A DNA stretch of 63,106 nt, filler included, from Klebsormidium nitens (taxonomy: Eukaryota > Plantae > Klebsormidiophyceae), in NCBI GenBank assembly GCA_000708835.1. It is 5 parts of 5 records of this genome, joined end to end, with 100 filler letters (N's around TTAATTAATTAA, not from the genome) between each part and the next. Parts side by side here need not be neighbours in the genome. Positions count along the whole stretch, not along the records: positions 8,909 to 28,543 come from DF237870.1; 4 more parts are not named here. One strand, given 5' to 3'. The notes under the pieces are model-generated. The model did not search any database. It worked only from the letters and a program-made list of their open reading frames with translations, and had not been told where the DNA came from. Position numbers and translations under genes: made by a program. Of this stretch, positions 8,909 to 28,543 are shown piece after piece; positions within the stretch are counted from its first letter, which is position 1, and every line of letters begins with the position of its first letter.

Positions 8909-11900
8909 GGAGCCCGTGGTTTGCGTGTTCTGGGGAGAGAAGGCGCACTGCAGCAATGGCGACTGCTCGGGTTCAGAGCGGTGCCGGCACCTTTCGGGGG
9001 TGCTCTCGAAGCAAACCTTGCCCCTAATTGAGCACGTCGCAAATGGAGGTGAGGGTGAGGCAAAGCGGACCGTTGCTGAGAGGAGGGCAGAGAGGGTTGA
9101 GCAGCGAGAAGCGGGGGCGAAGAAGCTCTTGGTCTGCAACGACCCCGTTTGCCGTCGGCCGTACTCAAAGGTCCTCTGCACGCATGGAGCCACGCTGGAG
9201 GCTTGGGAGTGTCTTCCAGCTGCAGCTCTCGACATGGGCCACAGCCGCAAGCCGATTGATACGGTCATGAGCCGTGGGGGAAGAAGCCTTTCGAGTCTGT
9301 GCGAGCGGTGGGGGGACGAGGGGGTCAGGCGGCGGGACAATACAAAGCACTTTTGTGCTCCACGACCCGTCGACTTGCTTTCTCCATGCGGACGGCCATG
9401 GCAGCTGGAGAGCAGGAAGGCGGCTCTAACAACGGCGGGGGCGCGCTACAATATCACGACTTACCGGAGGGTCTGTCGGCTAGCACCCGGCCACGAGGCA
9501 GCATGCTGCGCAGTAGCTTTTGACGGCCAGGTGAACATGTGCTTCTCATACTTTTGTTTCAGACGATTTTTTCCCAGGAGATTCGGCATCCAAAGTCGGT
9601 AAACTGTTGTGTCCGTTGACGACAGATGAGGTGCTTTCAAAAATCAAGTCGTGCGTAGGGATTGCCTGTGTATCAAAGCTCCAAATTCCTGATCTCGTCA
9701 GCAGCCATCTCGCTCAAGTGTCTTGCACCCATCGACATAGCAAAGACAGCTGCAAATCAGCTTCCTCTTCAAAGATCCGTTCGTCCCTCGCTTCAGAGCT
9801 CTCGAGAGTTGGCCGGAGGTCGATGCAGTCTGCAAGACTCAGGCCGGCCAAAAACGCTTGCATCTCAAAGTTCATCCTCAAAGGTTCGAGTTCTCTGTAA
9901 TGCTCGATGAGATGATTTCTTCTTTGAGCCACCACTCTGTTTCGCCAAGCATCACGAGCCGTTTTGAAGCCCTGTAGCCCATCATTTTCCCGGACGGCTT
10001 GAAAAAGCACATCCGACTCGCGATAGTATCGTACGCGCAGTCGACATTGACTCCGGAATGGATAAGGGACCCAAGGCAGACATGTCGGGTCCTTGAGGTG
10101 GTACTTTCGGCGAGCTTCTGTGGCCGTTAAACAACCCAGCATGTCATAATAAACGCAAATGCATATTCGACAAACTATTTTTCCTCTGTGCGGAGAAAGA
10201 GGCCAGTGGAAGCACTCACGATCCCATCCACAAATCATGCACATTGGAAAAGGCTCCTTGCTTTTGATGCACCGATGTGGTCCTGGCTCGGATCCTGGGG
10301 ATAAAAGTGGATACTCATGCATTTTGGTTTGAACATAAGCTTGTGCATCTTTGCAGGTGCATGCAGAAGCAGCCAAGTCTTCAAGACCGAGCTTTCCATT
10401 CTCTCCTACAATGCTGAGTACGGATGCAAACTTTGCGTTGATGTCCATGCCGTTGATGTCAGTCTCTAAAAGAAAAGGTATGATTTAAACGCGGCACTTA
10501 AACGACCTTTTAATTTTGCGTTTGCAGGAAGACGGCATCTTCAACTTTTCCGGCACCAACCTCATCTCGCACGGCCTCCTCTTGCGCAACCACTTTGCGG
10601 CGGCCCTGGGGGCGGCCCACAGCCTCAACTTTNNNNNNNNNNNNNNNNNNNNNNNNNNNNNNNNNNNNNNNNNNNNNNNNNNNNNNNNNNNNNNNNNNNN
10701 NNNNNNNNNNNNNNNNNNNNNNNNNNNNNNNNNNNNNNNNNNNNNNNNNNNNNNNNNNNNNNNNNNNNNNNNNNNNNNNNNNNNNNNNNNNNNNNNNNNN
10801 NNNNNNNNNNNNNNNNNNNNNNNNNNNNNNNNNNNNNNNNNNNNNNNNNNNNNNNNNNNNNNNNNNNNNNNNNNNNNNNNNNNNNNNNNNNNNNNNNNNN
10901 NNNNNNNNNNNNNNNNNNNNNNNNNNNNNNNNNNNNNNNNNNNNNNNNNNNNNNNNNNNNNNNNNNNNNNNNNNNNNNNNNNNNNNNNNNNNNNNNNNNN
11001 NNNNNNNNNNNNNNNNNNNNNNNNNNNNNNNNNNNNNNNNNNNNNNNNNNNNNNNNNNNNNNNNNNNNNNNNNNNNNNNNNNNNNNNNNNNNNNNNNNNN
11101 NNNNNNNNNNNNNNNNNNNNNNNNNNNNNNNNNNNNNNNNNNNNNNNNNNNNNNNNNNNNNNNNNNNNNNNNNNNNNNNNNNNNNNNNNNNNNNNNNNNN
11201 NNNNNNNNNNNNNNNNNNNCATGGCCTCCTCTTGCGCAACCACTTTGCGGCGGCCCTGGGGGCGGCCCACAGCCTCAACTTTGAGGCGGAGGACATGGCT
11301 ACGAGGTGCTTGGAGGGGCCGAACGTCCCTAGGCTGGACGACCGGGTGTTCGATTCGGCCATGCAGGCCTTCAACGACCTCGCCGCCCGGTCTCGAATCC
11401 AGCACGTGTGCTCGCGCGTCGATTGCGCGCATCTCTACACGGGCGAGGTGGAGGCGGCTGAGGCGAAGGCCCGGAGGGCTGGCAACCCCCTGAGGCCGGA
11501 GCGAACGGAAGGGCCGAGCTCCGAGCTGGCCACGTACGCTTTTGGACGGGACAAGGTTATCACCTTTGATGGGACCTTCTTTGCCAACTCGAGCGCGATG
11601 CGAGACTCCGGCACGGAAGCGTCCTTGCACGGCATCTGCGAACCGGACCCGAAAGCGCCGAGGGTCTCCGGGGGCTTCACTCCTTTGAGCGTGGGAGGGG
11701 TGCGCCCCTCCGACGTGCCACTGGAGGGGATCGACTGCCCCTGGAAGTATCGCAACGGGCTGTCCGAGTTGCGGCCGGCCGTGCGTGCTCTTGCGCAGAG
11801 GTGGTGCAACTTTCGCAAAGCTCCGGCCTAAGGGAGCAATGCGCCTCTGAAGCCGGAGGAGTTTGTCGCCATGCGGGAGGGGCTTCCGGCAAATGTCGCC

Positions 11901-13166
11901 GCTCTGATCGACCTCGTGATCGAGTCGGGAGCTTGTCACGATCCTGCCACGTGTGCGATTTGCAAGGCGGTGCCGCGGCGGCCCTGGATGGCAGGGTTCC
12001 TCAAAGACGGGCCCGTGGGATCGACCGGCTGGTGCCTGACTCACTTCCAGCCGTACGGAGCCCTCCTCCACGCCCTGCTCATCCCTCGCTACTCGTGGGT
12101 GTTCGGGCACGTGGTCACCTTGAAGCTGCTGAGACACGTGTTGCTGGAGGGGCCGCTCGACGAGCGCGGGTTGGCGTACCTCTCCAACGACGGCCCCATG
12201 CTAGCGGCCGTCCTGCGCCTCCATCCAGTTGCCGGCGGACAGTACGCATTTTCAGCAACGCTGCGGCCACTCGTGCGTGACATCTATGCCACGAACCTCC
12301 TCTGCTTCGAGCCCAGCGCAAACCGGCCGGGTCCAGCCTTGCGATCGCCACTGGCCGCACTCCATGATGCAACCGAGCACCTCTGGGCAATCGAAGGCGA
12401 GAAGCTGAGGCTTGCGGGTCGGCTAGAGGGGGCGGCCATGGAGTATGCCGAGCAACGTGGGGCGGCATTGAAGGGGGCTGCCAACTCGCTTCTGTTCGAG
12501 CTCGAGGTCCGCGAGCCCTCGTGCTACAAGGAAGGTGGCTTCCTTCGAGCGCCATCGGCCGCTTATGAGGAGCGGGTCGGCGCCGTCTCGACCTACTCTT
12601 TTCACCCCCTGCTGTACGGCCGGCCTCGGTTTGTCGATGGGGAAGACGAAGCCGGTCGGGGGAAGAGGGGTTCGGAGGAGCGGCTCACCCAACATTGTAG
12701 CGCCCCAAATCCTCGATCCTCCAAGGGGCGCGCCGGGATGTTTATCGCGTCCTGCCAGGATCGGGCGCCCCTTGGGTACCACTGGCTTAAGGGGGGCGAA
12801 TCCGTCTCCGATCTTGGCACCGTGCTACTCACGCGGTTCCCACTGGCATTTAAGACGCTGCGGGGGCTCACAATCGTAGAGGATGCCGCTTGCAACGCAC
12901 AGGAGTGGTTTCTCAATCGAGTGCCCCAGCTGGCCAAGTTCATGCTTTTTGTGGTGGATCGCTTTCACTCGGGGCCCGTGAGCTGCGCACCAACGGGGGC
13001 AAAGCGCTATGCCACGCACACTTGTGCGCCGACGCTGTTCATCGACTCCTTCTCGCAACACGGCCACACGATTACGACGGCTTCAGAGGGCATCAATTCG
13101 GGGTTAAAGCCTGAGATGTGCGGCCAGCCTCCAGCAGATCACGAGCATCAAGCGGCTGTTGAGTAG
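8909..13166 (+). mobile_element. CxC-domain KDZ (Kyakuja-Dileera-Zisupton)-type transposase gene with one in-frame stop; 5' end cut by the linker
   Basis: A Cys-rich exon (FCAPRP..SPCG..W..TYRRVC..FDGQ|gt, 9530) splices in phase 0 to 10528 (EDGIFNFSGTNLISHGLL). KDZ-like catalytic motifs follow: ITFDGTF, GYHWLKGGES..TVLLTRFP, IVEDAAC, VVDRFH..HTC, TASEGINSGLK. ORFs 11232-11831 and 11871-13166 share a frame and are separated by a TAA at 11829-11831. Confidence 0.8.
9714..10448 (-). CDS. Intronless protein with a C4 zinc finger and XPA-C-like DNA-binding segment, nested antisense in the transposase intron
   Basis: CMIC..CRIC followed by LTATEARRKYHLKD..LP..Y(R)ESDV..A..DGLQG resembles the XPA minimal DNA-binding domain pattern. 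The 244-aa ORF lies wholly within intron 9531-10527. Confidence 0.6.
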   Translation of the reverse strand: MDINAKFASVLSIVGENGKLGLEDLAASACTCKDAQAYVQTKMHEYPLLSPGSEPGPHRCIKSKEPFPMCMICGWDRECFHWPLSPHRGKIVCRICICVYYDMLGCLTATEARRKYHLKDPTCLPWVPYPFRSQCRLRVRYYRESDVLFQAVRENDGLQGFKTARDAWRNRVVAQRRNHLIEHYRELEPLRMNFEMQAFLAGLSLADCIDLRPTLESSEARDERIFEEEADLQLSLLCRWVQDT

Positions 13167-13525
13167 GGTTACAACGATCCTCGACACGTTGTTTGAGCGG
13201 TCAAAGTACGCAGTGTATTGGAGCAATACTAGCAATCCGTTGAGGGAGTCGATCAAGAGGGGGCGGCGTTGAGATTCTTCTGTATTACCCTATTACTCAT
13301 TACCCACCGCCTCAGGTTCCATTTTGGTATTTACATTTGTCATGTGGTGATGGATGCATTGAAGGGGGTTCATATTCTAAAAAGCAATGCACCGATTTCG
13401 TCTTTCTTGCCTTTTTCGGGCCTTCTCAATCCTACTCCATGACCGTACAGACGGCAAGCATTGTAAGGAGACTATTGCTAGGGTAGAATTACTAATTCAC
13501 TGTACTTTTGGATCGTCTCAACTGT

Positions 13526-14023: not shown

Positions 14024-16633
14024 TCAGTGCTCTTCGGCCTGAAGTTCATCATCGGTCTTCAGGCGAATGCCAAAAAAACCTCTGCCTCTTGATCTACCAT
14101 CATTCGTTCTGACCATGAGGGCTTTCCCACCATTAGGCGGTTGTTGCAAGTATCCCTTTAAGCGCATTGCCCTCGCCAATCCATCACCCGCCAAACCCAC
14201 GTCGTGCCCACCAGCATACAAGAAATCCTTAAAGGCTTCAACGAAATCGGATTTGGCGATCTTCGCAGTGGGGTCTTGTGTAAAGCAAGCCTCGTCTATG
14301 AAAGCTTGAAGCCTGTCATTCTCCTCAGCGTACTCATCTGCAGCTGCCTTGAATATTGCGGGGATTGGAGATAGAACTTTTGCAGCAGGTGCGAGTGCTT
14401 TTTTTTCATAGTACATCATCGCACCTCGAACGCAAAAATCCAGAGTGTCTGCGGCTCCCTCGTCTGACTCAAAGTAAGGCTTCACACTCAAGTCGATGGG
14501 CTTGTGCCATTTGTTGGTTGCGTCCAGCTCGTTGGGGTTCTTGAATGTGTAGTTGAACATGATGAGCACGATCCGTCGGATCAATGCGGCATCGTCGCTT
14601 GGAAAATGGGGCCTGAAGTTGGTGAAGAGACAGAGCTTATATTGGGGAACGTAGCTTTGCGGTTTGCAAAAGAGCTCTCGAGCATTGAGTTTGCCGCCTC
14701 CACTTGCCTCCTTTAAAAACGGTCCATTGAGCTCCTCAACCCCGTCGGATTCGTCATTGGTGACAAATCTCTTGGTACGAATCTGCATGAGGTGGGTCGA
14801 AGCCGCGGTTGCATTTGCTTTGAACGTTGGCTTGATGAATATGGCCTTGTTCTCGGCACAAATATAGCTCCCAAATGCTCTCTCAAGCGCTTGCTTTAAC
14901 GCGGACTTCCCATTCGCGCCCGAAAAGCCGTTTGCTATGACGAGAAGCTCCTCCGATGTCTCACCGGTGAGGCAATATCCCAGAAACATCTGGAGCCAGT
15001 CGATTGCCTCCGATGGGAGGATTTCCATCAGAAACGTTCTGAATCTGGACGTGGGCCGCAGTGAAGCGCCGGAAACGTATACGCTCGTCTGATTATTGCA
15101 GAGGTTTTGAGGATGATGCGGCAAAAGCGCCCCCGTCTGAAGATCGATCAAACCATTGGGCGCATTTGCGACCGCGTGATCCTGATCAAATATGTCGAGC
15201 AACCCCGGCACGTGCAAATCGTTGACAACAGAGTGCATGCACTTGCGCACGTCGACAATATCCTGCACGTTGATCTTGCCGAAGCTGGGCATGCTCTCAT
15301 CTAGTTCCTTCATGCACGCTTCTGTGGCCATCTTGATTTCCTTCAGCACCTTGGAGTTGACCTCTTCGATGTCGAGATGCTTGAGATTGCCATCCACCAC
15401 GTAGCCCTCCAAGTCCCGGTGCTTCGAGTACAGAGTGCCCAAAAATCTCTCTCGCTGCCATTCGTACCATGCCAGCAAACAGCCCATCTGACTTGTGAAG
15501 ACGCTCGTAACCATATTGCAGGTGTCTTGGATCCACGAAGAACCGTTCCAGACAAAAAAGTGCGATTCGCGGCTCTTTTCTGCATTCGTTGGTGGTCGCC
15601 AGAATGCGGCCCTCGATCATATACATGTACGCAAAGAGGCGTCCTAGGTTGGCGTACGCCTTCGGAGCCGCATGCTCAACAACGATCTTAAGCAGCAGGT
15701 CTTGGACCTCTTGAGTCCCTCTCGTGTACTGAGTTATCACTTGCATGTCGTCATGGGGGTCCACGGGCTCAGTGGTTGCATCTTGCAGAGCGGCCTTGAG
15801 GTCGTCCAGAACCCCGAGCTTTTTGGCCGGCTTGTGGGAGCAGTCGACACCGTGACAGCGATAGTAGACGTTTCGGCCTCTCTTGAGCAGGTTGAAATTG
15901 TTGCTTCCCGAGTGCATGTGGCCAAAGAGGCACCTTCGAGGCCCGTGTGTCCGATAGCAATAGTACGTCACGTACAAACCGTGCGGCAAAGTACCCGCGT
16001 ACGTGCTGGTCAAGTCGCCGGCCTCCCTCAGCATCTTTGCAAGTTCCGCCCGCAAGAGCTCTTTGCCGTGTGGCGACTCAGAGCTCGTGGCCGGCCGCCG
16101 ACTCTCGGGCTCGACTTCAATACTCTCCAATCCTTCGGATGATTCGATGAACGCTGCCGATGGTTCGATCCGTGGCACACCTTCGTCTTTGCTCGTCGTT
16201 GCGGCGGCGTTGACCGTTGCGATTGTTTACGAGCTCGACCAGCCAAGGATCCATCTCCTTGCACGCATCAAAGCTTGGGGGGCCGTTCAACCACTGGTAC
16301 TTTGCGACTTTGCCTTCGCCATTAATGTAGCTTGCCGGGGGGGCGTACACCAGGCCCCCGAGTCCACGTCCATCAACAGCATAGACTTTGCCATCAACCT
16401 TGATGGTCTCAAAGTTCAATGGATTTGCGCCATGAGTCGGGGTTCTTCATACGATTCCATTTTGGATGCTGAGCTTGCTTCCTCTGTCCATCCCAATAGA
16501 GTCGTACAGGGATTGCATAGAGGCCAGCGGCGGCTAGCCTTTCGATCTCGTGTCTAATAGCTAGAGGCCCCATGGCCTTGGAATCTCTGATGGCCTGAGG
16601 CCCAAGAGCGCTGGCTTGCTTACTATCAGACAT
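14024..16633 (-). pseudogene. Prim-Pol + Zn finger + D5-like SF3 helicase (primase-helicase), disrupted
   Basis: Prim-Pol ends GLYAIPV..KQAQHPKW and VDGRGLGGLVYAPP..YQW..PWL; Zn finger RRC..GHMH.GSNNF..YYRC..C; D5_N FFVWNGSSWIQD and NAPNGLIDLQTG; Walker A GANGKS, Walker B FVTNDE, motif C LFTNFRP. Frame breaks near 16415, ~16180 and ~15600. Confidence 0.88.
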
Positions 16634-16685
16634 CTTCTATTGCTTCACTAGAGAAAAAAGGGGCCTGTATGAACGTGCTTGAAAT

Positions 16686-17087
16686 TTGGACCGCGGTCAC
16701 GGGATGGAGTCAAATATAATCTCATGCAACATCAGGGCTCTCAATATGGACCATCAAAGCAATGACGGCTCTCAAAATAATTCGAACAATACTCTGTCCA
16801 TGAGTTCATGCCAGTGTCGCGCTTGCTGCACTCATAGGCAATATGCAAAGCTGCATCCGAGGAAGCACGCCGAAAACATGCGAGCATACTACCACAAACA
16901 CCAAGAATCCATATTGCTACGCCAAGCGTACAAAAGATATTTGAGGGGTCAAACAAAGAGACTACAGAAACAAACGTTGATCCGTTTGGCCAACGCGGGT
17001 TATGACGTGCCTCAAACGGCCTCTTTAAATGATGCCAAAGTACCAAGTCTTTCTTTAGGCGCCTTCACAAGCATAGAAGTCTCCTAG
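16686..17087 (+). CDS. Small basic protein of virus/PLV-like type (true start probably downstream)
   Basis: Basic helical segment NMRAYYHKHQESILLRQAYKRYLRGQTKRLQKQTLIRL lies between the D5 gene and the recombinase. The family is not established. Confidence 0.4.
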   Translation: MDRGHGMESNIISCNIRALNMDHQSNDGSQNNSNNTLSMSSCQCRACCTHRQYAKLHPRKHAENMRAYYHKHQESILLRQAYKRYLRGQTKRLQKQTLIRLANAGYDVPQTASLNDAKVPSLSLGAFTSIEVS

Positions 17088-17144: not shown

Positions 17145-18201
17145 TTAAATTTTTGAACCGTCCGGGTTGTACTTTTTCTCGTAGATTTTTTGAGCAATAG
17201 ATGCCGTGTGGAGCATTTGCCGTGCCAACTCCTCCCTCTCTCGCAAGCTGGGGGCGTCTTTCATTGCGTTCGAGACACAAATCTTCCGTAAAAGGCAACT
17301 TCCAACGGCTGCGTCCTTGAAAAGTCCGGTCGAGCGGAATTTTGTCATGTAGTTTCGACTCATTGGCTGATCAGGTGATCTCATGCGGGACAAAAGATGT
17401 TTGCGTGGAAAGACCTGAAGACTTTCAGCAATCACATTGTTGGACCGCGTGGACATATCAATGCTTGTCACGCCATGGTGTTTGACTGTCTTGAAGTCCT
17501 TTAGAACGAGACGAAATTGGTCCTTCTCGAATTCTACCATGTAGTTCTCAGATGATGATATGAGCTTGCGCGCCTCAGCGGTCCCGATGTCCTCAAATCG
17601 GACAATCGGGCACTCTGAATAATCATTACGTACGGCTGGTTGATACGTGAAGAGGCATAAAATGAGGTGGCGGATTAGGATGATCCTATCTTCGATTGAC
17701 AACTCCTCTGGCATTTTATGCAAAATCTTGCGATTCACGTATTTGCTGGAGCTCTACCCGGCGCTCATTGATCTGATCCAAATTCTTCCAGTTGGCCGCC
17801 TCACGCTCGGTGAGCTGTTGGGGCGGGGGCCGGGTTTCGTCCATGAGTTTGCGGACCGCCGTGAATCGTTGGTAGTACGCATCGTAGAGTCGTTTGTCAT
17901 TTGAGAATGCTTTTCTGCACACGACCAGAAGCGGATTAATGCTGGTTGCCTGCATACTTAGCTTTACGGGGTACGTCTCCTGAAAGTATTTGATGATTGT
18001 GTCGGAATCCTTGATCCATTCCAAATTGTTAAAGTTGCTCTGTTTGTGCAAACCCTGAAACAAGCGCATGACGTGCTTCACATATTGCGCAATTGTGTTT
18101 TGATTTCGATCGCCATCGTCGAATACTTGGCGTAGCAGATGTTCACCGTTGGTTACGGTGGTTACGCATTTTGTGCTTACGCTAGACTCTTCCATCTTCA
18201 A
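17145..18201 (-). pseudogene. Tyrosine recombinase of virophage/Polinton-like-virus (OLV11-like) type, one frameshift
   Basis: Motifs LTEREAANW, YQPAVRNDY (Arg), DFKTVKHHG (Lys), LLRKICVS (Arg) and MLHT..QKIYEK (His, Tyr). The two ORFs 17716-18201 and 17145-17738 overlap out of frame. Confidence 0.82.
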
Positions 18202-18461
18202 GTTTGCTGGGATAATGATGGAAATTTTTTCGACAAGCTGAACGCTCGTCTTCTCAGAAAACGTGATTATTCACGTTCTAAAATGTGTCAAACGAATTTA
18301 ACATGTAGAGTCGCTTTTGTCGATTTTCTGGTTACAAAAGCTTGTATAAGCCGGCTTCATAGCCAGACGGGCCGTATATTTTCGATCGAAAAGTTACTAA
18401 CTCAGATAATGTGACTGGCGGCATACAAAATTCAAAGATGGGGACTTTTGGCCGATTCATA

Positions 18462-19013
18462 TTATCTGGGCGACATGATTTCAGAGACTTCGTGAGCCAC
18501 TCGAGCCTTCTCCGGATTCGCAAGCATCTCAAGGCCCAAAAGCGGCTCATTGTTGTCCCACACAACGCTCGGAGCACGACAGGCAGATGACGGGAAGACC
18601 GCTCTTGGTTCCATGCAATTTGTGGGAGATAACACTCCTTTTTTATGCACGTCTGCATGGGTCGTAGAGATTTGCAACTTTCGTGCCCGACGTCGTGCTT
18701 GAGAGGCGTGTTTTAGGGCGACTCGCCAGCTTACCTTTATTGCATATGGGCCATGCAAACCGGATTTGTCCCAAAAGGCGCTGAACCCGTCAGCAACTAG
18801 CGACCGCACGAGCTGTCTGGTTATATGACGAAGGTCAAAGGGGTCAGCCAGCGCTCGAATGCCACCCAGAGCTGCGGCATCCAAGGTGGTCTCGAGCAAG
18901 CCAAATTCTTGATAAGATCGTATGATAGCTAATCGAGCACTCTCAAGAACGGACTTGTCCATCTCAATGATTGCAAAGGGCGATTGAGGACGATAGCCAA
19001 GAATTGCGTCCAT
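18462..19013 (-). CDS. Unknown protein; possibly the frameshifted C-terminus of the HIRAN gene
   Basis: The 183-aa ORF overlaps the end of 18929-19624 on the same strand. No domain recognised. Confidence 0.35.
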   Translation of the reverse strand: MDAILGYRPQSPFAIIEMDKSVLESARLAIIRSYQEFGLLETTLDAAALGGIRALADPFDLRHITRQLVRSLVADGFSAFWDKSGLHGPYAIKVSWRVALKHASQARRRARKLQISTTHADVHKKGVLSPTNCMEPRAVFPSSACRAPSVVWDNNEPLLGLEMLANPEKARVAHEVSEIMSPR

Positions 19014-19624
19014 TCAAACGGTTGATGTACCGTACACACAAAAAAATCACAAAGATACCATTGCACACGAGCAATCATTTTTCCAAGTACGTCTACGTCC
19101 ACCCCAGATTTGGGCAAGGTTGAAATGATTTCGTCTTTGATAGTCTCATGCACAGCAGCGCCGCATCGCGATATATGAGTGTCGATTAGGTTTGACGCTT
19201 TGAGCAGAATTTGGCAAACTGTATCATCAGAAGCGGTATCCGAGCATGCACCAGAGCTCGTCCCATAATCTATTCGAAGATCATTGATCTCCACCACAAA
19301 GCCCCACGGCCCATGGTAGCCCCTGCCCCAATTGATGCGGTAAACCCGTGCGGGCATCTCTATCCCTTTGCGGTCTGGATCATAAACTTTATGATCTTTG
19401 ATGTCGCGCCCAACAAACCCTGAAGGATTCTCACGATCCACCGAGTCGAAGATCCCAATGGCGTAGGTGTCATACCCGTTCCCAGAATGCTTGCAAAGCA
19501 TTAGCTCTTGGCCGGGTCGAAGCTTGCGAACGCGTTGTGGACGGCCTTCACAGCTGACCCCGACGGCTCGACATAACATGCGTCCATCCGGAAGTTGCTC
19601 CATTGTTGGTATATCCGCCACCAA
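18929..19624 (-). CDS. HIRAN-domain protein
   Basis: AVGVSCEGRPQRVRKLRPGQELMLCKHSGNGYDTYAIGI..SGFVGRD fits the HIRAN pattern (VvG..R....L..G..l.L.r.p.N.yD..AI.v..GYv). Confidence 0.7.
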   Translation of the reverse strand: MVADIPTMEQLPDGRMLCRAVGVSCEGRPQRVRKLRPGQELMLCKHSGNGYDTYAIGIFDSVDRENPSGFVGRDIKDHKVYDPDRKGIEMPARVYRINWGRGYHGPWGFVVEINDLRIDYGTSSGACSDTASDDTVCQILLKASNLIDTHISRCGAAVHETIKDEIISTLPKSGVDVDVLGKMIARVQWYLCDFFVCTVHQPFEWTQFLAIVLNRPLQSLRWTSPFLRVLD

Positions 19625-19669
19625 ACTCTCACCCTAAGTATACACCCGCGAGCTTGACAAACGAACTTG

Positions 19670-20460
19670 ATCGTGCAGATTGACGAGCTTCTGTACCATG
19701 AACTACAACGTTGCTGAAGAAAGTGTCTGGCAAGGGGGCCGTCAATTTGCACCGCGTGCTATACAAAGAAGCTCTTGAAACAGTGCAGATTGACGAGCTT
19801 CTGTACCATGAACTACAACGTTGCTGGAGAAAGTGTGCGGCATGGGGGCTGACAATTTGCACCGCGTGCTATACAAAGAAGCTCTTGAATCAGTGCAGAT
19901 TGACGAGCTTTGTACCACAGTGAACTACAACGTTGCTCAAGAAAGTGTGCGGCATGGGGGCTGACAATTTGCACCGCGTGCTATACAAAGAAGCTCTGGA
20001 AACGGTGCAGATTGACGAGCTTCTGTACCATGAACTACAACGTTGCTGAAGAAAGTGTCCGGCATGGGGGCTGACAATTTGCACCGCGTGCCATACAAAG
20101 AAGCTTTTGAAATAGTGCAGATTGACGAGCTTCTGTACCATGAACTACAACGTTGCTCAAGAAAGTGTCCGGCACTGTGGGGTCGTCAATTTGCACCGCG
20201 TGCTATACAGATAAGCTTTTGAAACGGTGCAGATTGACGAGCTTTGTACTATGAACTACAACGTTGCTCAAGAAAGTGTTCGGCATGGGGCCGTCAATCT
20301 GCACCCTGATGCTTAACAAGAAAGGCCTCACAAATGGTGCAGATTGACGACCTCGCTCTATCTCTTACAACATCGTTTGAATAAGTGACCAGCATGGGCT
20401 TGTCAATTTGCACCACCATGCTATACAAAGAAGCCTTTACAACCGTGCATATTGACAGCT
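19670..20460. repeat. Tandem array of ~7 units of 108-112 bp, each with inverted 12-bp boxes G(T/A)CAATTTGCAC-N30-GTGCAGATTGAC
   Basis: Left boxes at 19741, 19851, 19963, 20073, 20185, 20293 and 20402. The unit length is mostly not a multiple of 3, so it is non-coding. Confidence 0.92.
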
Positions 20461-20729: not shown

Positions 20730-23700
20730 TCATGCACTCAGGACTAGTCCCGTCTCCGGAGTAAACCAACCGTACCGCTCATGCAGGCCCAACCAAATGG
20801 CGGGCGTCAACACGTGGGGATTCTTGAATTTGCCGGCGCTCCTTGAGCCCATACGTAGCTCAATCCCAAGGCCCGCCCTGAGCACGTTGCCCACTGCATT
20901 CCGCTTCTGAGCCCTCTTTTCTCTCACTTTCCCTTCGGCAGCCTTCGACGGCCTGGTGGTCTGCTGCACAAAGCCGTACAGGTTAAAGATGGTCTTCAAA
21001 CGGGTCTGGTTGGGCCCGATGTGCTCCGCATAGGCAGCCTGCACGCGCTCGTCCGAGACCTCCCACCGCTCCGCCTTATGATTCAGCTCCCCCTCCTCGC
21101 AACCCACGAGGAAGGCGAGGACGCGCACCGCAAACGGCACACGATTGACAGGGTCGCGCATTTCCTGGACGTACTCCTAAATCACGCCCTCCTCGTTGGC
21201 CTGCCCAAGTGCTCTGTTCAGGTCCGCGGCGAGGGCGTCGAAGCGGTGCTCCCGAAACCTGCAGGTCACGACAAGCGTCAGAGGGGCAGCAATATGAGAC
21301 TTTGGACGTACGATTTGCAGCCGAAGAAGGAAACAAAATTGAGCGGAACCTTTGGCTCTGGGCACATGCTGCAGACTTGAAGTTCACCGATCGTTCACTT
21401 CAGGTGGAAGTCGAAGGCAGCAGGAGGGCATCAATTTTTGCTCAAGAGACGAGCACGACTGAAATGAGGCGCTGACCTGAGATAGTTCGCGTGGGCCTCT
21501 CTTGTCCTCTTTGCATCGTCCTCGTCAGCGCAAAAGCGGGTGTAGAAGTCGTGATCAACCCGACTGGGGTCGACCTTGTACTCCTTCTTGACCATCTCGA
21601 ACAAGAACTCCTGGAACCTTGAAAGAGCTGAACGATCTACACCACCTTTTAGGCTTGAATGTAAAGAGCGACCAGTCAGATTGACTGCTGAGCCGTGCCG
21701 GGCAATCAGATCTCAGCTCACTACTGGGGCGCCTTACCTGCAGCTGTTTGCAAAGCACTGGTAGCGCGCAATGCGTGGCTCGTCCCGCTTGTATATCAGG
21801 TACGGGTTTTGGTTGCCTGGGGACGTGTGGCGCCTCCCCGCAATGCAGCACGTGGGCTCCGGCGTGCAAAAGTGGATGAAGAACACCCCCGGCCGCTCCT
21901 GCACCACCCGGTCGATCTGGGCCCCTGCGTGATCCTCCTGGTAGCGGGCGATGAGGATGGCCCGCTCCTGCTCGGTGAGATCCTCGCCGAGCCCCTCCGA
22001 GGTGCTCGCCTCGTCGAGGGCTAGCGCCCTCTGCCGGAAGGCCCCCACACGAGCGGGGGCAGGGGGGCCGCGCTGCGCGGTTGCCCACTGCCCAAGAAGG
22101 TCGGCGCTAATCTCGGTGGAGTCGGCCAGCTCTGCTTCCGAGTAAAGGCAGACCAGGTGGTCAGCGATCGCCTCAGAGCTGCCATCGCAGGGGACGAGGG
22201 AGCGAAGACGGTCCCCGAACTTGGAGGACCTCAAGATTCGGAAGCAGCGGTAGCGCCCATAGACGGACCCGTCCCACATGTAGGCGGATCCATTCTCCTT
22301 CCGCAAGAGCTCGATGCTCGCCTTCAGGTCGTCCGGGGGGCTCTCCAAGAAGCACCCAAAGGCCTTCCCGAACGCCCTCCTGGCTTCCAGGCCCCTCAGG
22401 TAAAACCCCTCCAGCACCTCGTGCACACTGTACTTGAACTCTTGCTTCGGGGGGCGCGCCGGACCGTGCGCCTTGCAAGCTTGGAAATGGAGCGCGCCCT
22501 CGGGGATGTTCAGCACCGAGGTTAAGAAACGGTCCCTGACCAGGTGGAAAGCCCCCAGGCGCCGTTCAAAGTCGCTTGAATCCTCGGTGGGGAGCGAAAA
22601 GTCCAGGTCGAAGTAGACGCGCCAGCAAGCATCGTCCTGGATGAGCTCGTACAGATGCGCAAACGGCCCAAGCGACCTTCGGTGCGCCACCAAGGCCGCG
22701 ACATTCTCGAAGCTGCCGTAGCGCTTTGCCCCCCCCTGGTGCACATCCTCCGCTACCATGATTGCACGCCCGTTTGCCCGCCTTTGCTGCAGCGCCTCCT
22801 CTAGCTTCTTGCACCAGCTGGGCCCACCATCTCCGACCGACGCAGCCTGCGGGGGCTCCCCAAGCAGCTGAGCGGGTGGCTCCAAGGGCGGAATTGCAGT
22901 TGACGGCTCAGCTGACGGCTCAGTTCCAGTGGGCTGACTTGTGTCCACTGCCGGGGGCTGGTTTGGCAGGTCGGGCGAAAGCGCCTGGTCGACGGGCGCC
23001 TGCTCCTGGTGGATAGGGGAAGGGAAGGGGCCGACTGTTGGGGGCTGACCGGGGACCACCTCGGGCTGTGCGCTTTGGATGGGGGGCGGGGCTGTGACCG
23101 GGGGCTTAGGGCGCTTGACTTGCTGAGCAGCAGCAAGCTCCTCAGCGAGGAAGCGAGAGGGTGGATCTTGGGCAGGGTGCCCGGCCGAGGAGGGGGGTTC
23201 ACGAGGATGCGAGAAGAAGGGAGGGGTTGGCTGCTGGGTGGCGGGTGCATCGTCGGCTGCGAGGGGCTGATTGCTTGGAAGCGGCGCCATCGGCGCCTGC
23301 TCCTCTTCTGCAAAAGGGGGCTCGGAGGGGGCTGCTGGTGGGGGCTGCTCAGCGCTCAGGGCAAGGCTGAAGCCATCTTGAGGAGGGGGGGCGACACGGG
23401 GCGAGGGAGGGGCAGCGGCGAGAGCGCCCGGGTCCTGGATGGTGCGGGCCGGGGGGTCATCCGCCGAGGTTGGCACGCCAAGAGGACGCACACGCCCGTA
23501 GCGTTTCAGGCGCCCCCCGCGTGCGGTCGCTTCCTCGGCGTCCCGCTTGGCTTGGAGGCGCTCTGCCAAGGCTCCAACGTTTGAGATGGGAGCGTCGGTC
23601 ACAAGTGCCTGCGTCAAAGAAACAATGAACAGGGGTTTTGATTCATCTGCGAAAGGAAGCCGGATCAAATACGCAGGATCATGTTTGCAACCATACAACG

Positions 23701-23743
23701 CCCCCCCTATTACAAGCAAGGCCACAGACATGTCTAACAGCAC
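20730..23743 (-). pseudogene. PrimPol/herpes-UL52-like archaeo-eukaryotic primase with Zn finger, two introns and one in-frame TAG
   Basis: AEP motifs HLYELIQ..WRVYFDLDF, KYSVH and DGSVYGRYRCFRILRSSK; Zn finger CCIAGRRH..GNQN..YQCFANSC; Pro-rich N-terminal linker. Phase-2 GT-AG introns at ~21738-21620 and ~21477-21258 restore the frame, and a TAG at 21177-21179 separates two in-frame segments. Confidence 0.82.
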
Positions 23744-23789
23744 TTGGAAACTCTAGGACAAAGCGCGCAGTACACTTGGCTGCCTGCCA

Positions 23790-24190
23790 AACCTAACCAT
23801 GGCACAAGGCAAGCCTGACCACGCTTCCGAATAAACTTGAGCACGGCCCCAAAACCAGGCCCAGAGCAAATTAGCAAACCCCGAATTAGCCATGTGACCA
23901 CGGCACAAGACAAGCCTGACCGCACCCTTAAGATCATTTGACCGCAGGCCCAACCCAGCCCCAAAACCAGCCCAAAACCGGGACCAGAGTAGACCCAAAA
24001 CCAGCCTAAGCGCGGCGCAAACACCAGCCTGACTGCGCTCCCTAGACTAGCTTGTTTTTGGCCCCGAACCAGCCTTAGAAACAGGCCCGCAGCATTCTCA
24101 AACCCAACCTACCACGCCCCCAAAACAGCCTGCCTGCGCCCTCTGACCAGCTTGACCACGGATCCGAAAGCAACCCAAACCAAGCCCAGA
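23790..24190. repeat. Strand-biased C/A-rich repeat region with recurrent CCCAAAACCAG
   Basis: About 6 variants of CCC(C)AAAACC(A/G)G, plus a 100-bp-spaced duplicate CCA(T/C)GGCACAAG(G/A)CAAGCCTGACC at ~23798 and ~23898. Confidence 0.7.
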
Positions 24191-24429
24191 GCAGAACTGC
24201 ACACCCCTAGAGACAATCTAGGTAGGTCTGGTGGAAGTGCACGCGCCTCAGCTTTTTAAACGACGTCAGGAACCGCAACCACAGATGCACGCAGAACTCT
24301 ACCGGACGGCTTTAGGGAGAGTGTAATCTCTGCGGCAACTTACGACGGGGGGTGCATGAGCCGGGCCTCCAAAATCGCCCAGCTCCGTTTGATGTATGGC
24401 TTGCCCCTCGCGCTGCAGTCTGGGGGCCC

Positions 24430-25134
24430 TTAGGGCCCCAAGTGTTTGGTGATGAGCTTCAACAGCCGCTCGACCGGCCGCTCGAGCCAACTCGTCCACT
24501 CGGACAGGGTTCGGCTTTGCCCGTTTGCTGTAGATGCGCAAGAGAGCGGATCAGGAACGACAATCATGCAGACCACTGTTGGCAGTACCCAAGGACTCAG
24601 CAACGGTATGCTGTAGCAGCGATCCAGGAAAGCTCTGCAGATAAAGTGGAACCCACAAGGTTGCTCTTCTTGTTGGCAGTACCCAAGGAAGCAATTGACG
24701 GCATACAACACACCAGAGTCGCCTTTGTGTTGGGGATGCAAAGATACGCGATAAGTACTGGCCAACGAGCTTACTGTCGCTTTTTTGACGTCGGCCGACC
24801 AGTCTTTGGAGCCACTGGCGTTGATGGCCTTGCTTCGCTGTCCTGGCTGCGTACCTGAACGGCCAACGGGTTGCGAATGGGTGAGCTTTGAGCAAGCATT
24901 TGGCAACTGCGGCGGTCAGGATCACAGGATGTATGTGCGCGGTAGGCTGGGCTCCCGAAAAGCGAAGCCAGTTCGCTGCCCACTCCGGCTGGCCGCCGTA
25001 AGAAAAGTGGATGCAACAACAACCCCACAGACATTCAAGCATTGAAGCATTGCTGAGCAGTAGAGTACCCTGTCAGAAGTCCGCTTTGAACTAAGCGCGC
25101 CACGATCGTGGCAGGCCCCATCTTGCGCGTACAA
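24430..25134 (-). pseudogene. Cys-containing ORF of unknown family split by an in-frame TGA
   Basis: ORFs 24922-25134 and 24430-24906 share a frame. No domain recognised. Confidence 0.25.
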
Positions 25135-26507
25135 GCCTGCAAGTCAAAGATCCAAACACATCCTGCTTTCCAGTGAACTAAAGAGACGAGGTTCAAAGAG
25201 ATCCGTACTCATTGAGAGGCTGCGCTGGGCTCACCAGGTCGGGCGCTGTAGGTGCTGAACTATGCCTTCCAAGCGGCTCCTGCTCGCCGGCCTCGGCACC
25301 ATTGCTGCAGCAGTAAGAAGCAGTCAGTCTCTGACGACCCACTCTATGATTCTGAAAGCACACGCAGAGCCAAATATGCACACTTTGAGACCAAGTCTAC
25401 TTTTGGGACTGGGGCCGGATTCAAAATCTCAAAGCAAAGCATCTGACTCGGGTCGAGATCGGGACCCACTTCTTCATCATGCTGAAAGCCTTCATAAAGT
25501 GCATCGCCTTCGGAAGAGGCAGTGGAGTAAGGCGACACTTAGCAGGGTCTCACGTTTCTAGCCCCCCCAGCTCCTCAGGAGCGTGTTGCTCTGACGAGGA
25601 GGGAGGGCCGTACATCGTCTCCTCTCTGGCCACCCAAGCCTCTCGCCGCTGTCTGCTCTCTGCAAAGAAGTCAGCAACCGCTCGCTCCTTGGACCTGCGC
25701 CCATTGCGGTCGCTGTCACTAAGGTCCTCCTCAAGCTCCTCCTCAAGCTCTCTGGCGTCCCTGATATCCAGAAGAGGGAGGGGAGGATTAGAGGGCTCGT
25801 TACACATGCTTATGACTTATTGCGCACGTAATCATTGTAGCAGTTCTACTGTGACGTGCGCACAACTTCCGTCAAGACAATCAACAAAGCCTGATGCACG
25901 ACTGTTAAAGGCAATGCGTGTCACAAGAATCTTGGCGCAGGTGCTCACTGTGTGAGAGCGCTAGTAGCCAGTTCGATCACGTTGCCAGCAGCAAGGTCTG
26001 GAGGGGCTCTGCTGGCAAGTTCGGAGAGCTTGACGAGTCTCCCCCTCTTTCTCCTCCTCAACGGTTCTGCTCCTGATGGCACCTACACACCGTGCCACTC
26101 CAGTAAGCCGGCTGACTCATGAAAGCAGTCACGCGCTGACCATTTTATCTAAGCAACGACCGGAATCTGGCAGCATGGTCGTGAAACGCAGCTTCTAAAG
26201 CTCTCCAATTTGGAGAGAAGTACGTCGAACTTGTGGGGGCTCTTACATGCTTCGGCGGCCTCTTTGTGCCGACACCGGATCCCGAACGCTGCAGTTGGTC
26301 CGCGCTGGCGTGTTGCCAATCCTCAGGGCCGTCTCTTGCCTGCGAAATGGAAATGCACATACAGTTTGTAGAACTTTCAAACCCAGCTGAGGCGTTTGAC
26401 GTTTCTAAAACGGCACACAGTGTTGTTGGGAATCGGTTTATGTGGGCAGGCGGGCAATCACTTGTGCGCTGCCTGATCTAGAGGAGTGGAGAGTCAGATA
26501 CATGGTT

Positions 26508-26750
26508 GACAATTTGCACCTCGGGTTCTATACAATCGCTTCTTCAGGCCAGTGCAGATTGTCTGGACCTGATCCAACCAAGAATACTGCCCGACCGCTG
26601 CCGTCAAATTGCACCTTGGCTTCTTTACTGTCGCTCCTTCAAGCCAGTGCAGATTGTTAGTGGCCTGAACCAACAACACTACCAACCGCTGCCGTCAATC
26701 TGCACCTTGGCTTCTATGCAGTCGCTTCTTCAAGCCAATGCAGATTGTCA
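26508..26750. repeat. Second array (3 units, 91-95 bp) of the inverted 12-bp box
   Basis: GACAATTTGCAC-N32-GTGCAGATTGTC, GTCAAATTGCAC...GTGCAGATTGTT and GTCAATCTGCAC...ATGCAGATTGTC, with left boxes at 26508, 26603 and 26694. Confidence 0.88.
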
Positions 26751-27724
26751 GAGGCTTAATCGAACAACAACAATCACTCTGAAAACCTCCCGGACGGGTG
26801 CTTGCTCACATTGTGAAGAGGCGGCAGAGCGACTACTCTGGCCGCGCCGACGTCGTCCACTGGCGTGTCTCCTCCTGATGCTAGGGGACGGTCCCCTTCT
26901 ATCGATGAGGGTCCCGGATTGCTCTCGACCCCACCGATAATCAAGAGCTTTTCTGCAAAGGGTCAATGGACATATCAACTTTGACGTCCGGGCTCCATGA
27001 GCCTTTGGAGACCCTAGTCCGCTCAGACGACCATCAAAGGAGAGCGGCTAAGCAAGACTCAGCAGGCTGCTTTCACCGGGAGTTTCTCCAATTCAACAAG
27101 CTGCATCTGTCTCCAATTGAGTGTCCTGCTACCAAGTTGAGCAGATTTAAGGACCTGACCTGGGCTCTCTTGACTGAATGACCTGGCACCCGCTAGACTT
27201 TGTGCCAAGGCTTGACCTCTTGTTCATGGATCAGACTCGGATCAGCTGTTATTCGTCCGATGAATGACTTACCAATTAGGTCTCTGCTCCTGGGAGTTGG
27301 ATCCCACCAGTATTGGTTTTGCTGCCAGTCGTTGCAACCTATGGAGAAGAGAGAAGGTGATTTTGAGTTGCGCATGACACAGGGAAAACTCGCAGCAGAT
27401 TCGACACCAAGCTCAAAAGGTTTCAAGCTTAACGAGCTTTCTCAAGGTCAACGGGATGCAGCACAGGGAGAGAGCCTGGCAGACTGCCCGTAGTTGCGCT
27501 GGCAGCAAGATTTAAGCTCGACCGAATCAAGGGTCATTGAAAAGCAAAAGGCACAAATCTTCCAAGGCACTAGAGGCTTAGGAACCCTCACTGTGTGGAA
27601 CTGGAAGGAAAAGCACAAAGAATTCAAGATCAGGGTTGGAAAACGCGTGCATCCATGGCTGACTCATGTGGGCGTAGAGGCTCGCATTCTCGTCTCCCTG
27701 GCCCCAGGATACGAGACACACAAG

Positions 27725-28375
27725 TTACAGTTGCAAATTTGGGGACCCTAAAGCACGAGTGGCCCCAAGGCCTAAACCTGGCTCCCGCAAAGGCCCGATC
27801 AACCTGTGCTTCGACCAAGTTGGCTCGATCAAGGTGCTGTTCTCACCTTTGTCCCCAAAGAGGTAGCTGGCCGGTTCCTCCCTCGCTCTCCTCGCTCTCC
27901 TGGATGCGCCACCAGCTGGCTGCCAGGCCTCATTCGTGGCAGCTGGGCTCGCGGGCGCGGGCGCTGGGCTCGCAGCAGTCCTGTGAGCTCCAGGGGAGGG
28001 GCTCGCTGGTCGCCGCAGCCCCTCCCTGAGGTGGGCCTGCTTGATACAAGTCAAGACCTTTTCAAAGCCCTGTTGCAGGCCCTCGTCTGCAGTGCCCGCG
28101 TGCACCTTGAGCCCCGCCATCGCTGCATGGATGCTCCCATTCCAGGCAGCCTTCGACCAGAGAAGGCCTGCGGACCCGAGTTCCTCTCGAGCGCGCTGGC
28201 ACAGCGTACCCGCCACCTTCCGAAAGATGCAGTGGCCTCTCTTTGAACCGGTGAGAAAGCCTCTGGACGCGCTCGCCACGAGCACTTTGACAGCTGGGGT
28301 TGGGAGAGCATCATTGCAAGATGTGCCGAATGTGGCCTGCAGGGAAACAGCTCTGTGCCTTAGTGAAACAGACAT
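27725..28375 (-). CDS. First exon of an unknown multi-exon gene
   Basis: ATG at 28375, GC-rich coding-like ORF and a good donor GACAAAG|gtgaga near 27845. No domain recognised. Confidence 0.35.
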   Translation of the reverse strand: MSVSLRHRAVSLQATFGTSCNDALPTPAVKVLVASASRGFLTGSKRGHCIFRKVAGTLCQRAREELGSAGLLWSKAAWNGSIHAAMAGLKVHAGTADEGLQQGFEKVLTCIKQAHLREGLRRPASPSPGAHRTAASPAPAPASPAATNEAWQPAGGASRRARRAREEPASYLFGDKGENSTLIEPTWSKHRLIGPLREPGLGLGATRALGSPNLQL

Positions 28376-28427
28376 TCATGTCAGCAGGAGGAAAGCAAGC
28401 TAGCCAGAAAGAGCATGGCGTGCGGCC

Positions 28428-28543
28428 GACAATCTGCACCCACTGGTCTATGCATTGAAGCTTCTAAGCTAATGCAATTTGTCGATCCTTGCTGCATGGA
28501 CCACAGAAAGACCCGAGAGCGCCCGGCATGGGGCCTGACAATC
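28428..28543. repeat. Third inverted-box array, truncated by the contig end
   Basis: CGACAATCTGCAC-N32-ATGCAATTTGTCG, then GGCATGGGGCCTGACAATC running into the linker; this matches the array-1 unit. Confidence 0.8.

What the first reader, a model, noticed from the sequence alone, without database searches (positions are those of the whole stretch)
8909..28543. Capsid-less composite element: KDZ transposase + PLV-type recombinase + two primases + HIRAN + XPA-like gene
Seen: within one ~19.6-kb contig lie a CxC/KDZ transposase, a Prim-Pol/D5 primase-helicase, an OLV11-like tyrosine recombinase, a HIRAN protein, a PrimPol-like primase and an XPA-like protein. Nearly all genes from 14.0 to 28.4 kb are on the minus strand, and no typical host gene is present. 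Known: D5 primase-helicase plus this recombinase type is typical of virophages/Polinton-like viruses; HIRAN binds 3'-OH ends at stalled forks; PrimPol reprimes; XPA recognises lesions. Inference: a large self-replicating, non-encapsidated mobile element carrying a replication-restart/damage-tolerance kit. I know no described element with this combination. It could instead be several unrelated insertions in a TE-rich zone.
Basis: partly seen in the sequence, partly recalled or inferred. Interest (0 to 1): 0.82.

Follow-up and report, generated by a model that had tools for sequence, protein, structure and literature searches.

The report
Decayed multi-copy replicative element, Klebsormidium
The whole piece is one worn-out copy of a large, multi-copy mobile element of the green alga Klebsormidium nitens that carries virus-type DNA-replication genes together with a KDZ-type transposase; no element with this gene combination turned up in the searches made here.

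Summary
The piece is Klebsormidium nitens scaffold DF237870.1 (record 5756-25390). It is not a patchwork of insertions. Its gene order recurs in five other K. nitens scaffolds and four metagenome contigs, and non-synonymous change is far below synonymous change in every conserved gene.

- **KDZ transposase:** confirmed, through a profile search.
- **Prim-Pol/D5 primase-helicase:** confirmed.
- **PrimPol-like primase:** confirmed, but it is the N-terminal domain of a primase fused to a UL9-like SF2 helicase. The helicase half is missing in this copy.
- **HIRAN:** moderately supported.
- **Tyrosine recombinase:** catalytic signature only; no significant match.
- **XPA-like:** not supported.

The assembly gap is spurious: its flanks overlap by 63 nt and the reading frame continues.

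New here: arrays of about 110-nt units with 12-nt inverted arms lie just upstream of element genes in all but two of the copies examined (the two shortest stretches). The arms differ between sub-lineages.

This copy is decayed: four genes are broken. No capsid or packaging gene was detected in about 44 kb of a better-preserved copy, but many conserved ORFs stay unidentified and no element end is defined. "Capsid-less" is therefore unproven.

Most likely this is a new variant of virus-like integrative replicons. A damage-tolerance kit is unlikely.

The parts
8910..9599 (+). Gene A, C-terminal third. The gene is about 640-660 aa in intact copies; the rest lies beyond the 1210-N gap left of the piece. 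Function unknown.
   Evidence: 63% aa identity to the L002 ORF of 637 aa and 54% to P0225. dN/dS about 0.2. No Pfam, PHROG or PDB match.
9714..10448 (-). Gene B, a small Cys-rich (CxxC...CxxC) protein. Its reading frame is open.
   Evidence: 44-50% aa identity to L002 and L007 copies, with pN 0.29-0.33 against pS 0.74-0.76. No XPA or other match in Pfam, PHROGs or a PDB profile search.
10522..13266 (+). Gene C, a KDZ-superfamily transposase. It is broken (1 in-frame stop and 1 frame change) and runs across the spurious N gap.
   Evidence: 88-90% identity to P0035 and P0037. Profile search: 861 relatives; 29 of 40 distant ones carry Pfam KDZ and 20 of 40 carry CxC4. Weak direct KDZ and CxC4 hits in family members.
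10633..11219 (.). Assembly gap (N run), spurious. Its flanks are 63-nt duplicates of each other.
14024..16633 (-). Prim-Pol (AEP) + Zn finger + D5_N + SF3 helicase gene, broken by 3 frame changes.
   Evidence: D5_N at E 5e-10. 70% identity over 82% of the intact 1026-aa ORF of L002, which has Prim-Pol, D5_N and DUF5906. PDB match to ASFV C962R at E 5e-8. Twelve K. nitens paralogues.
16683..17084 (+). Small conserved ORF on the opposite strand. Function unknown.
   Evidence: Conserved in six copies, with pN 0.27-0.42 against pS 0.74-0.97.
17148..18270 (-). Tyrosine-recombinase-like gene, broken by 1 frame change.
   Evidence: Intact 379-aa ORF in L002. The R..K..[H/L]xxR..H-9-Y signature is conserved in every copy in which that stretch can be read. 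Weak Phage_int_SAM_1 hit at E 0.053. All significance tests failed.
18465..19013 (-). ORFx, a conserved 183-aa protein of unknown function. Its reading frame is open.
   Evidence: 40-56% identity in seven copies; dN/dS about 0.2. No family or PDB match.
19199..19603 (-). HIRAN-like protein. Its reading frame is open.
   Evidence: Pfam HIRAN at E 0.025. Precomputed weak HIRAN hit on the L005 homologue. Profile hit to PDB 3k2y at E 0.0024. Copies in L004, L005/L010, L015 and L016. The AlphaFold2 model was poor.
19589..20460 (.). Array of about 7-8 units of 110 nt. Each unit has 12-nt inverted arms (GTCAATYTGCAC and its complement) 30 nt apart. The array lies directly upstream of the HIRAN start codon.
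   Evidence: (20 motif matches against 0.24 expected). Arrays sit at the same position in L006, L005/L007, L004 and L002.
20733..23752 (-). Remnant of an AEP (PrimPol/UL52-type, with Zn finger) - UL9-like SF2 helicase gene. The AEP domain and the C-terminal tail are present. The helicase part of about 500 aa is absent (1 large deletion), and there are 1-2 in-frame stops.
   Evidence: Relatives P0060, P0061 and P0064 carry Herpes_ori_bp at E 1e-13 to 1e-16. P0061 residues 406-926 have no match in the piece. PDB matches: PrimPol and herpesvirus origin-binding protein.
24320..24544 (-). Short block conserved in other copies. Gene content unresolved.
   Evidence: 64-69% aa identity to L006 and L016.
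26496..26769 (.). Second array, three units of about 93 nt of the same type.
   Evidence: The ORF 26482-26937(+) that overlaps it has a dN/dS of about 0.55 and is a doubtful gene.
27728..28375 (-). Conserved 216-aa ORF of unknown function.
   Evidence: 70% identity to L006 and 49% to L005/L010; dN/dS about 0.3.
28406..28535 (.). Start of a third array, 30 nt upstream of the ATG at 28375. It is cut by the scaffold end.
   Evidence: The L006 counterpart array lies at 3072-4387.

Best explanation
The piece is one decayed copy of a family of large integrated elements of Klebsormidium. The family is at least about 25 kb long, and about 34 kb in the best-preserved contig.

Shown:
- The gene order is conserved across copies: array; 216-aa ORF; AEP-UL9-like SF2 helicase; array; HIRAN; ORFx; recombinase-like gene; small antisense ORF; Prim-Pol-D5 SF3 primase-helicase; then, convergent to it, the KDZ transposase with genes B and A; array.
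- There are several divergent sub-lineages.
- All genes are under purifying selection.
- This copy is broken.

Inferred:
- The element replicates as its own replicon. The AEP-SF2 helicase would act as origin-binding primase-helicase and the D5-type protein as fork primase-helicase, with host polymerases doing the synthesis.
- HIRAN serves that module by binding 3' DNA ends. It is not part of a host repair pathway.
- The KDZ DDE transposase inserts or excises the element. The recombinase-like protein, if it is a tyrosine recombinase, resolves or integrates circular forms.
- The upstream arrays, with their lineage-specific inverted arms, are binding sites for an element protein: promoter or enhancer arrays, possibly also origins.
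For: - Collinearity with L002, L003, L006, L015 and L016 (K. nitens) and with L004, L005/L007/L010, L008 and L009 (metagenomes).
- pN far below pS in all conserved genes.
- Domain calls.
- The AEP-SF2 helicase architecture is known from mimivirus R8, ASFV F1055L, OsHV-1 and Yaraviridae (preprint 10.1101/2024.02.29.582850).
- Arrays lie at equivalent sites, 30-250 nt upstream of start codons, and are oriented with the gene. Their arms differ between lineages while the core is shared.
- Host-like genes (Myb; weak RtcB; weak Kdo) flank copies within 25-35 kb.
- Similarity between L009 and L004 ends sharply on the KDZ side.
- No capsid or ATPase Pfam hit in any called gene over contig positions 1313-45562 of Ga0590115_0002795.
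Against: - Neither end of any copy is defined. No TIR, TSD or att-like repeat was found.
- The recombinase call rests on motifs only.
- Genes A, B and ORFx, the 216-aa ORF and the distal genes of the long contig have no assignable fold, so a capsid module cannot be excluded.
- No DNA polymerase was seen.
- There is no evidence of present-day activity. The window copy has four broken genes.
- The function of the arrays is untested.
Confidence: 0.6

Rival explanations
1. It is an endogenous virus: Polinton-like, mriyavirus-like or another small relative of Nucleocytoviricota. Its capsid and packaging genes are either among the unidentified conserved ORFs or lie in parts of the element not sampled here. 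On this reading the KDZ gene is the integration module of a virus, as piggyBac is in Teratorn.
For: - Both primase-helicase types are typical of Nucleocytoviricota, PLVs and virophages.
- K. flaccidum/nitens holds Phycodnaviridae-like DNAP, MCP, ATPase and VLTF3 genes elsewhere in its genome (PMC5294986).
- The size of 25-35 kb fits PLVs (14-40 kb; PMC12220804).
- Many ORFs are unidentified.
- PLV capsid proteins are hard to detect with Pfam (own knowledge).
Against: - No capsid, ATPase or protease family hit in the window or in about 44 kb of the long contig.
- No relatives of the D5, AEP or recombinase-like proteins in IMG/VR pattern scans.
- Host-like genes flank copies closely.
Confidence: 0.3
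2. The genes are several unrelated insertions in a TE-rich zone.
For: - Retroelement fragments occur near some copies (RVT_1 in L009).
- Modules are swapped between copies: a divergent D5 type in L006 and L007, two KDZ subtypes, and genes A and B missing in L015.
Against: - The same order and orientation of 10 or more genes recurs in ten loci at 30-90% protein identity.
- A shared set of upstream arrays occurs in most copies.
Confidence: 0.04
3. It is a host gene cluster for replication restart or damage tolerance (HIRAN + PrimPol + XPA).
For: HIRAN-like and PrimPol-like domains are present.
Against: - It is multi-copy and variable between copies, and this copy is broken.
- The PrimPol-like domain belongs to a viral-type primase-helicase.
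- The XPA likeness fails.
- It is linked to a transposase.
Confidence: 0.02

Closest known systems
Teratorn (piggyBac-herpesvirus fusion elements of teleosts; PMC5822658, listed)
   Same: A cut-and-paste DDE transposase travels with a virus-type DNA replication module in a large multi-copy integrated element. A UL9-like origin-binding helicase and a UL52/PrimPol-type primase are part of the picture.
   Different: - Teratorn is a complete alloherpesvirus of about 180 kb with capsid genes and a piggyBac transposase.
- Here the transposase is KDZ-type and the unit is about 25-35 kb.
- No polymerase or capsid gene was detected.
- The host is a streptophyte alga.
Polinton-like viruses and virophages with an OLV11-like tyrosine recombinase and a primase-S3H (PMC4642659)
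   Same: The size range matches. Both have an AEP/primase-SF3 helicase, a tyrosine-recombinase-type gene next to it, integration in algal genomes and multiple copies.
   Different: - The defining PLV trio (MCP, minor capsid protein, packaging ATPase) was not found.
- Kinship of the recombinase-like gene to OLV11 is not shown.
- PLVs are not known to carry a KDZ transposase or an AEP-SF2 helicase.
- No TIRs were found.
KDZ (Kyakuja-Dileera-Zisupton) transposons carrying cargo such as TET/JBP genes in fungi (PMC12730594)
   Same: Transposase family. Relatives of gene C carry the KDZ and CxC4 domains. Both are multi-copy and carry passenger genes.
   Different: - The cargo here is a complete replication module with two primase-helicases.
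- A recombinase-like gene is also present.
- The transposase is very divergent: direct Pfam hits are sub-threshold.
- TIRs and TSDs were not found.
AEP-SF2 (UL9-like) primase-helicases of mimivirus (R8), ASFV (F1055L), OsHV-1 and some Yaraviridae (preprint 10.1101/2024.02.29.582850)
   Same: Domain architecture of the full-length relatives P0060, P0061 and P0064: an N-terminal PrimPol-type AEP followed by a Herpes_ori_bp helicase.
   Different: - Those are genes of free viruses, whereas these sit in an integrated algal element.
- The window copy has lost the helicase half.
- No phylogeny was made.

Membership tests
KDZ transposase superfamily | Sequence homology to the KDZ catalytic domain (Pfam PF18758). 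| tested here: met
   Direct hits are only E 0.04-0.07. The family profile reaches 861 proteins, and of 40 distant hits (E 1e-23 to 1e-10) 29 carry KDZ, the best at E 5e-9.
KDZ transposase superfamily | N-terminal CxC zinc cluster. | tested here: inconclusive
   CxC4 in 20 of 40 distant relatives and in one close relative (E 2.5e-4). Not detected in the window copy itself.
KDZ transposase superfamily | Terminal inverted repeats and target-site duplication. | tested here: inconclusive
   No TIR found between the sampled ends. No complete element end is available.
Tyrosine recombinases (including the OLV11-like group) | Significant similarity to the catalytic domain. | tested here: not met
   - Pfam: only Phage_int_SAM_1 at E 0.053 in 1 of 12 pieces.
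- PHROGs: none.
- PDB profile: none.
- hhalign against two phage integrases: E 0.17, probability 0.35%, though in the right register.
Tyrosine recombinases (including the OLV11-like group) | Catalytic signature R-K-H-R-H/W-Y in order, with His-to-Tyr spacing of 9. | tested here: met
   Alignment of the copies. All six positions are present in the L002/L007 type. In the window type the first His is Leu. The His-to-Tyr spacing is 9 in every copy in which that stretch is readable. The canonical spacing is from my own knowledge.
Tyrosine recombinases (including the OLV11-like group) | Recombinase fold. | tested here: inconclusive
   AlphaFold2 with a 3-row alignment gave pLDDT 51. The Foldseek matches were meaningless.
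Tyrosine recombinases (including the OLV11-like group) | Specific kinship to OLV11 of the Organic Lake virophage. | not tested
   No comparator came back from any search. The IMG/VR pattern scan found nothing. I had the OLV11 protein in mind and wrote out no letters.
Polinton-like viruses / virophages | [quoted passage not shown] | tested here: inconclusive
   No such Pfam hit in the window or in the called genes of Ga0590115_0002795 positions 1313-45562. The unidentified ORFs could hide them.
D5/P4-type primase-helicases | AEP (Prim-Pol) + D5_N + SF3 helicase. | tested here: met
   In the window copy the gene has 3 frame changes.
AEP-SF2 (UL9-like) primase-helicases | PrimPol-type AEP fused to a Herpes_ori_bp helicase. 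| tested here: not met
   Met in the relatives P0060, P0061 and P0064. In the window only the AEP domain and the C-terminal tail remain.
HIRAN domain | Match to the HIRAN profile or structure. | tested here: inconclusive
   - Pfam: E 0.025, 14.8 bits against a cut-off of 24.7.
- Precomputed weak hit on the L005 homologue.
- PDB 3k2y at E 0.0024; that this chain is a HIRAN domain is from my own recollection, as the entry is named only 'uncharacterized protein lp_0118'.
- AlphaFold2 model poor.
XPA | XPA zinc finger plus DNA-binding domain. | tested here: not met
   No XPA hit in Pfam at E<=10, in PHROGs, or in a PDB profile search at E<=10.

The most novel reading that the evidence does not exclude
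This is a new class of eukaryotic mobile element: a capsid-less, self-replicating integrative replicon. It combines a KDZ DDE transposase and a tyrosine-recombinase-like enzyme with two virus-type primase-helicases, a HIRAN protein and lineage-specific iteron-like arrays. It would be evolving as several lineages in streptophyte algae.
Probability: 0.3. Interest if true: 0.8.

Novelty: new variant of a known kind. Interest (0 to 1): 0.62.

Why it matters
- **Evolutionary link.** If the family is a transposase-borne replicon without a capsid, it would be a link between cut-and-paste transposons and virus-like replicons, in the algal lineage sister to land plants. It would parallel Teratorn in fish but use different parts.
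- **Origin of the replication genes.** It would show where Nucleocytoviricota-type replication genes (AEP-SF2 and AEP-SF3 primase-helicases) reside outside viruses.
- **Annotation.** The orphan 'SF3 helicase' and 'replication origin-binding protein' genes annotated in K. nitens, for instance the 12 K. nitens D5-like proteins, would be explained as copies of this family. The NCBI gene models here join separate ORFs or skip a stop.
- **A tractable question.** The arrays, with arms that change between lineages, offer a sequence-level case of protein-site co-evolution.

Tried and rejected
- **Pfam.** A scan of 20 stop-to-stop ORFs gave only D5_N.
- **PHROGs.** Nothing useful.
- **Recombinase-like gene.** These all failed to reach significance: a PDB profile search; AlphaFold2 with a 3-row alignment (pLDDT 51) followed by Foldseek; Pfam on 12 pieces; and hhalign against two phage integrases fetched through primase hits.
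- **HIRAN.** The AlphaFold2 model was poor (pLDDT 42), so I did not search with it.
- **Gene B ('XPA-like'), gene A and ORFx.** PDB profile searches were empty.
- **Pattern scans.** IMG/VR scans for D5, AEP and the recombinase-like protein, and one metagenome scan, found no relatives. One alignment was too diverse to scan with.
- **RNA.** Rfam and tRNA scans were empty, so the arrays are not known RNA genes.
- **Element ends.** A TIR search between sampled ends was negative.
- **Literature.** Four of the seven full-text searches were aimed at this gene combination or host. None found a description.
- **Rejected readings.** A host repair cluster, and unrelated insertions.
- **Limit.** Locus-derived proteins could not be handed to the fold or profile tools, which kept the alignments shallow.

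Full report
**Source and gap**

The D5 ORF is identical to KFL_009210020 of Klebsormidium nitens. The piece is GCA_000708835.1 scaffold DF237870.1, record positions 5756-25390. Its right edge is the scaffold end. To its left lie a 1210-N gap and then about 3.7 kb that continue gene A.

I tested the N run at 10633-11219 first, as asked. The 63 nt on its left recur on its right with one mismatch. The intact copy L002 has that stretch once, and the two window alignments overlap on it by about 62 nt. When the flanks are overlapped, the reading frame of the gene is continuous, and close full-length relatives align across the join. The gap is therefore an assembly artefact and no sequence is missing.

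**The piece is one recurring element**

ORF-by-ORF tblastn shows the same genes in the same order and orientation in ten loci:
- K. nitens scaffolds DF237777 (L002), DF237765 (L003), DF237105 (L006), DF237273 (L015) and DF237250 (L016);
- JGI metagenome contigs L004, L005/L007/L010 (one 54-kb contig), L008 and L009.

L006 is collinear with the window from 28.3 kb down to 14.3 kb. The 54-kb contig is collinear from gene A, left of the piece, through to 28.3 kb.

Between copies, non-synonymous differences are far below synonymous ones, which are largely saturated, in every conserved gene. Where it could be estimated, dN/dS is 0.05-0.37. The copies therefore diverged as functional lineages.

The family is multi-copy. 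The word searches returned 12 K. nitens D5-type proteins, 5 KDZ-type and 4 AEP-type.

**Gene by gene**

- **KDZ transposase.** Direct Pfam matches are sub-threshold. A profile of 20 family members searched against 1.84 billion representatives gave 861 hits. Of 40 distant hits, 29 carry Pfam KDZ and 20 carry the KDZ-associated CxC4 cluster. Two subtypes exist, and both always sit convergent to the D5-type gene.
- **Primase-helicase.** The domains are Prim-Pol, a Zn finger, D5_N and an SF3 helicase. The nearest named relatives are phage and plasmid P4-type primases and ASFV C962R.
- **PrimPol-like gene.** A family profile hits human PrimPol. Full-length relatives continue into a Herpes_ori_bp (UL9-like) SF2 helicase, at E 1e-13 to 1e-16, and they match solved herpesvirus origin-binding proteins. 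This AEP-SF2 architecture is described for mimivirus R8, ASFV F1055L, OsHV-1 and some Yaraviridae. In the window the helicase half is absent.
- **HIRAN.** There are three weak but concordant signals, and the gene recurs in five copies.
- **Recombinase-like gene.** L002 has an intact 379-aa ORF. The copies keep an R..K..xxR..H-9-Y signature. No search or model reached significance. I rate it a probable tyrosine recombinase. Kinship to OLV11 is untested.
- **'XPA-like' gene B.** It is a conserved Cys-rich protein with no XPA match.
- **Unknown function.** Gene A, ORFx, a small antisense ORF and a 216-aa ORF are conserved, but their function is unknown.

**State of this copy**

| Gene | Breaks |
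|---|---|
| Prim-Pol-D5 primase-helicase | 3 frame changes |
| Recombinase-like gene | 1 frame change |
| KDZ gene | 1 stop and 1 frame change |
| AEP-helicase gene | 1 large deletion and 1-2 stops |

The reading frames of B, ORFx, HIRAN, the small ORF and the 216-aa ORF are open. Gene A is cut only by the assembly gap.

**Arrays (new observation)**

Units of about 110 nt hold 12-nt inverted arms 30 nt apart. The window has 20 motif matches, where 0.24 are expected by chance. They form arrays at 19589-20460, 26496-26769 and from 28406. A fourth array lies left of the piece, about 1 kb upstream of gene A's start.

Equivalent arrays occur in all but two of the other copies that were checked. TRF found none in L008 or in L009, the two shortest stretches. 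The arrays lie 30-250 nt upstream of start codons and are oriented with the gene. Between lineages a core is shared while the arms differ. They are not known RNA genes.

I infer that they are binding sites for an element protein, acting as promoters or enhancers and possibly as origins. This is untested.

**What the element is**

The best reading is a virus-like integrative replicon that carries its own initiation and priming machinery, a KDZ transposase and probably a recombinase. I give this a confidence of 0.6. The damage-tolerance idea is not needed, because HIRAN and the AEP domain fit the replication module.

'Capsid-less' is unproven:
- No capsid or packaging family was seen in the window or in about 44 kb of the long contig.
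- Host-like genes flank copies within 25-35 kb.
- Against that, many ORFs are unidentified, no end is defined and no TIR was found.
- K. nitens is also known to hold Phycodnaviridae-like core genes elsewhere in its genome (PMC5294986), and its virus-derived genes are preferentially methylated (PMC12344493).

The closest known systems are Teratorn, Polinton-like viruses with an OLV11-like recombinase, cargo-bearing KDZ transposons, and viral AEP-SF2 primase-helicases. Of the seven full-text searches made, the four aimed at this gene combination or host found no description of it.

My notes and several script tables (and notes 1-4) give ORF-piece and HSP bounds of broken genes that I used as query references. 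These bounds bracket the frame changes.

Noticed in passing
window 21180-28120; window 11295-13163: The NCBI gene models look chimeric or forced. KFL_009210030 (1114 aa) joins 11 matched pieces over 7 kb that other copies show as separate conserved blocks and arrays. KFL_009210010 skips an in-frame stop.
   Followed up: partly
L006 20086-21885; L007 11974-13035: Module swapping between copies. These copies carry a D5-type helicase only 23-27% identical to the window's, while the neighbouring genes are 50-75% identical. Two KDZ subtypes also exist.
   Followed up: partly
L015 1510-2500 (DF237273.1): This copy lacks genes A and B. A small conserved ORF, which on the window's scaffold lies left of gene A (L001 19652-20257), abuts the KDZ gene directly here.
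   Followed up: no
L003 1-4032; L004 1917-2708: A second, divergent Prim-Pol/D5 primase-helicase lies upstream in these copies. It could be a tandem element or an extra module.
   Followed up: no
window 16683-17084 (+): A small ORF antisense to its neighbours is conserved in six copies, with pN 0.27-0.42 against pS 0.74-0.97. The ORF on the opposite strand of the same stretch found no match.
   Followed up: partly
window 13804-13885: A 28-nt imperfect inverted repeat lies in the AT-richer spacer between the convergent KDZ and primase-helicase genes.
   Followed up: no
L009 18741 / L004 17573: DNA similarity between two type-2 copies from different metagenome samples stops abruptly at the same point, after which the flanks are unrelated. 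This is a candidate element terminus on the KDZ side.
   Followed up: partly
L009 6584-6769; L016 17729-18441: An RVT_1 (retroelement) fragment lies near one copy. L016 is a rearranged copy with the D5-type gene in the opposite orientation and an assembly gap.
   Followed up: no
L002 3527-6314: A gene with Pfam DUF8368 sits where other copies have HIRAN and the array. Its role is unknown.
   Followed up: no
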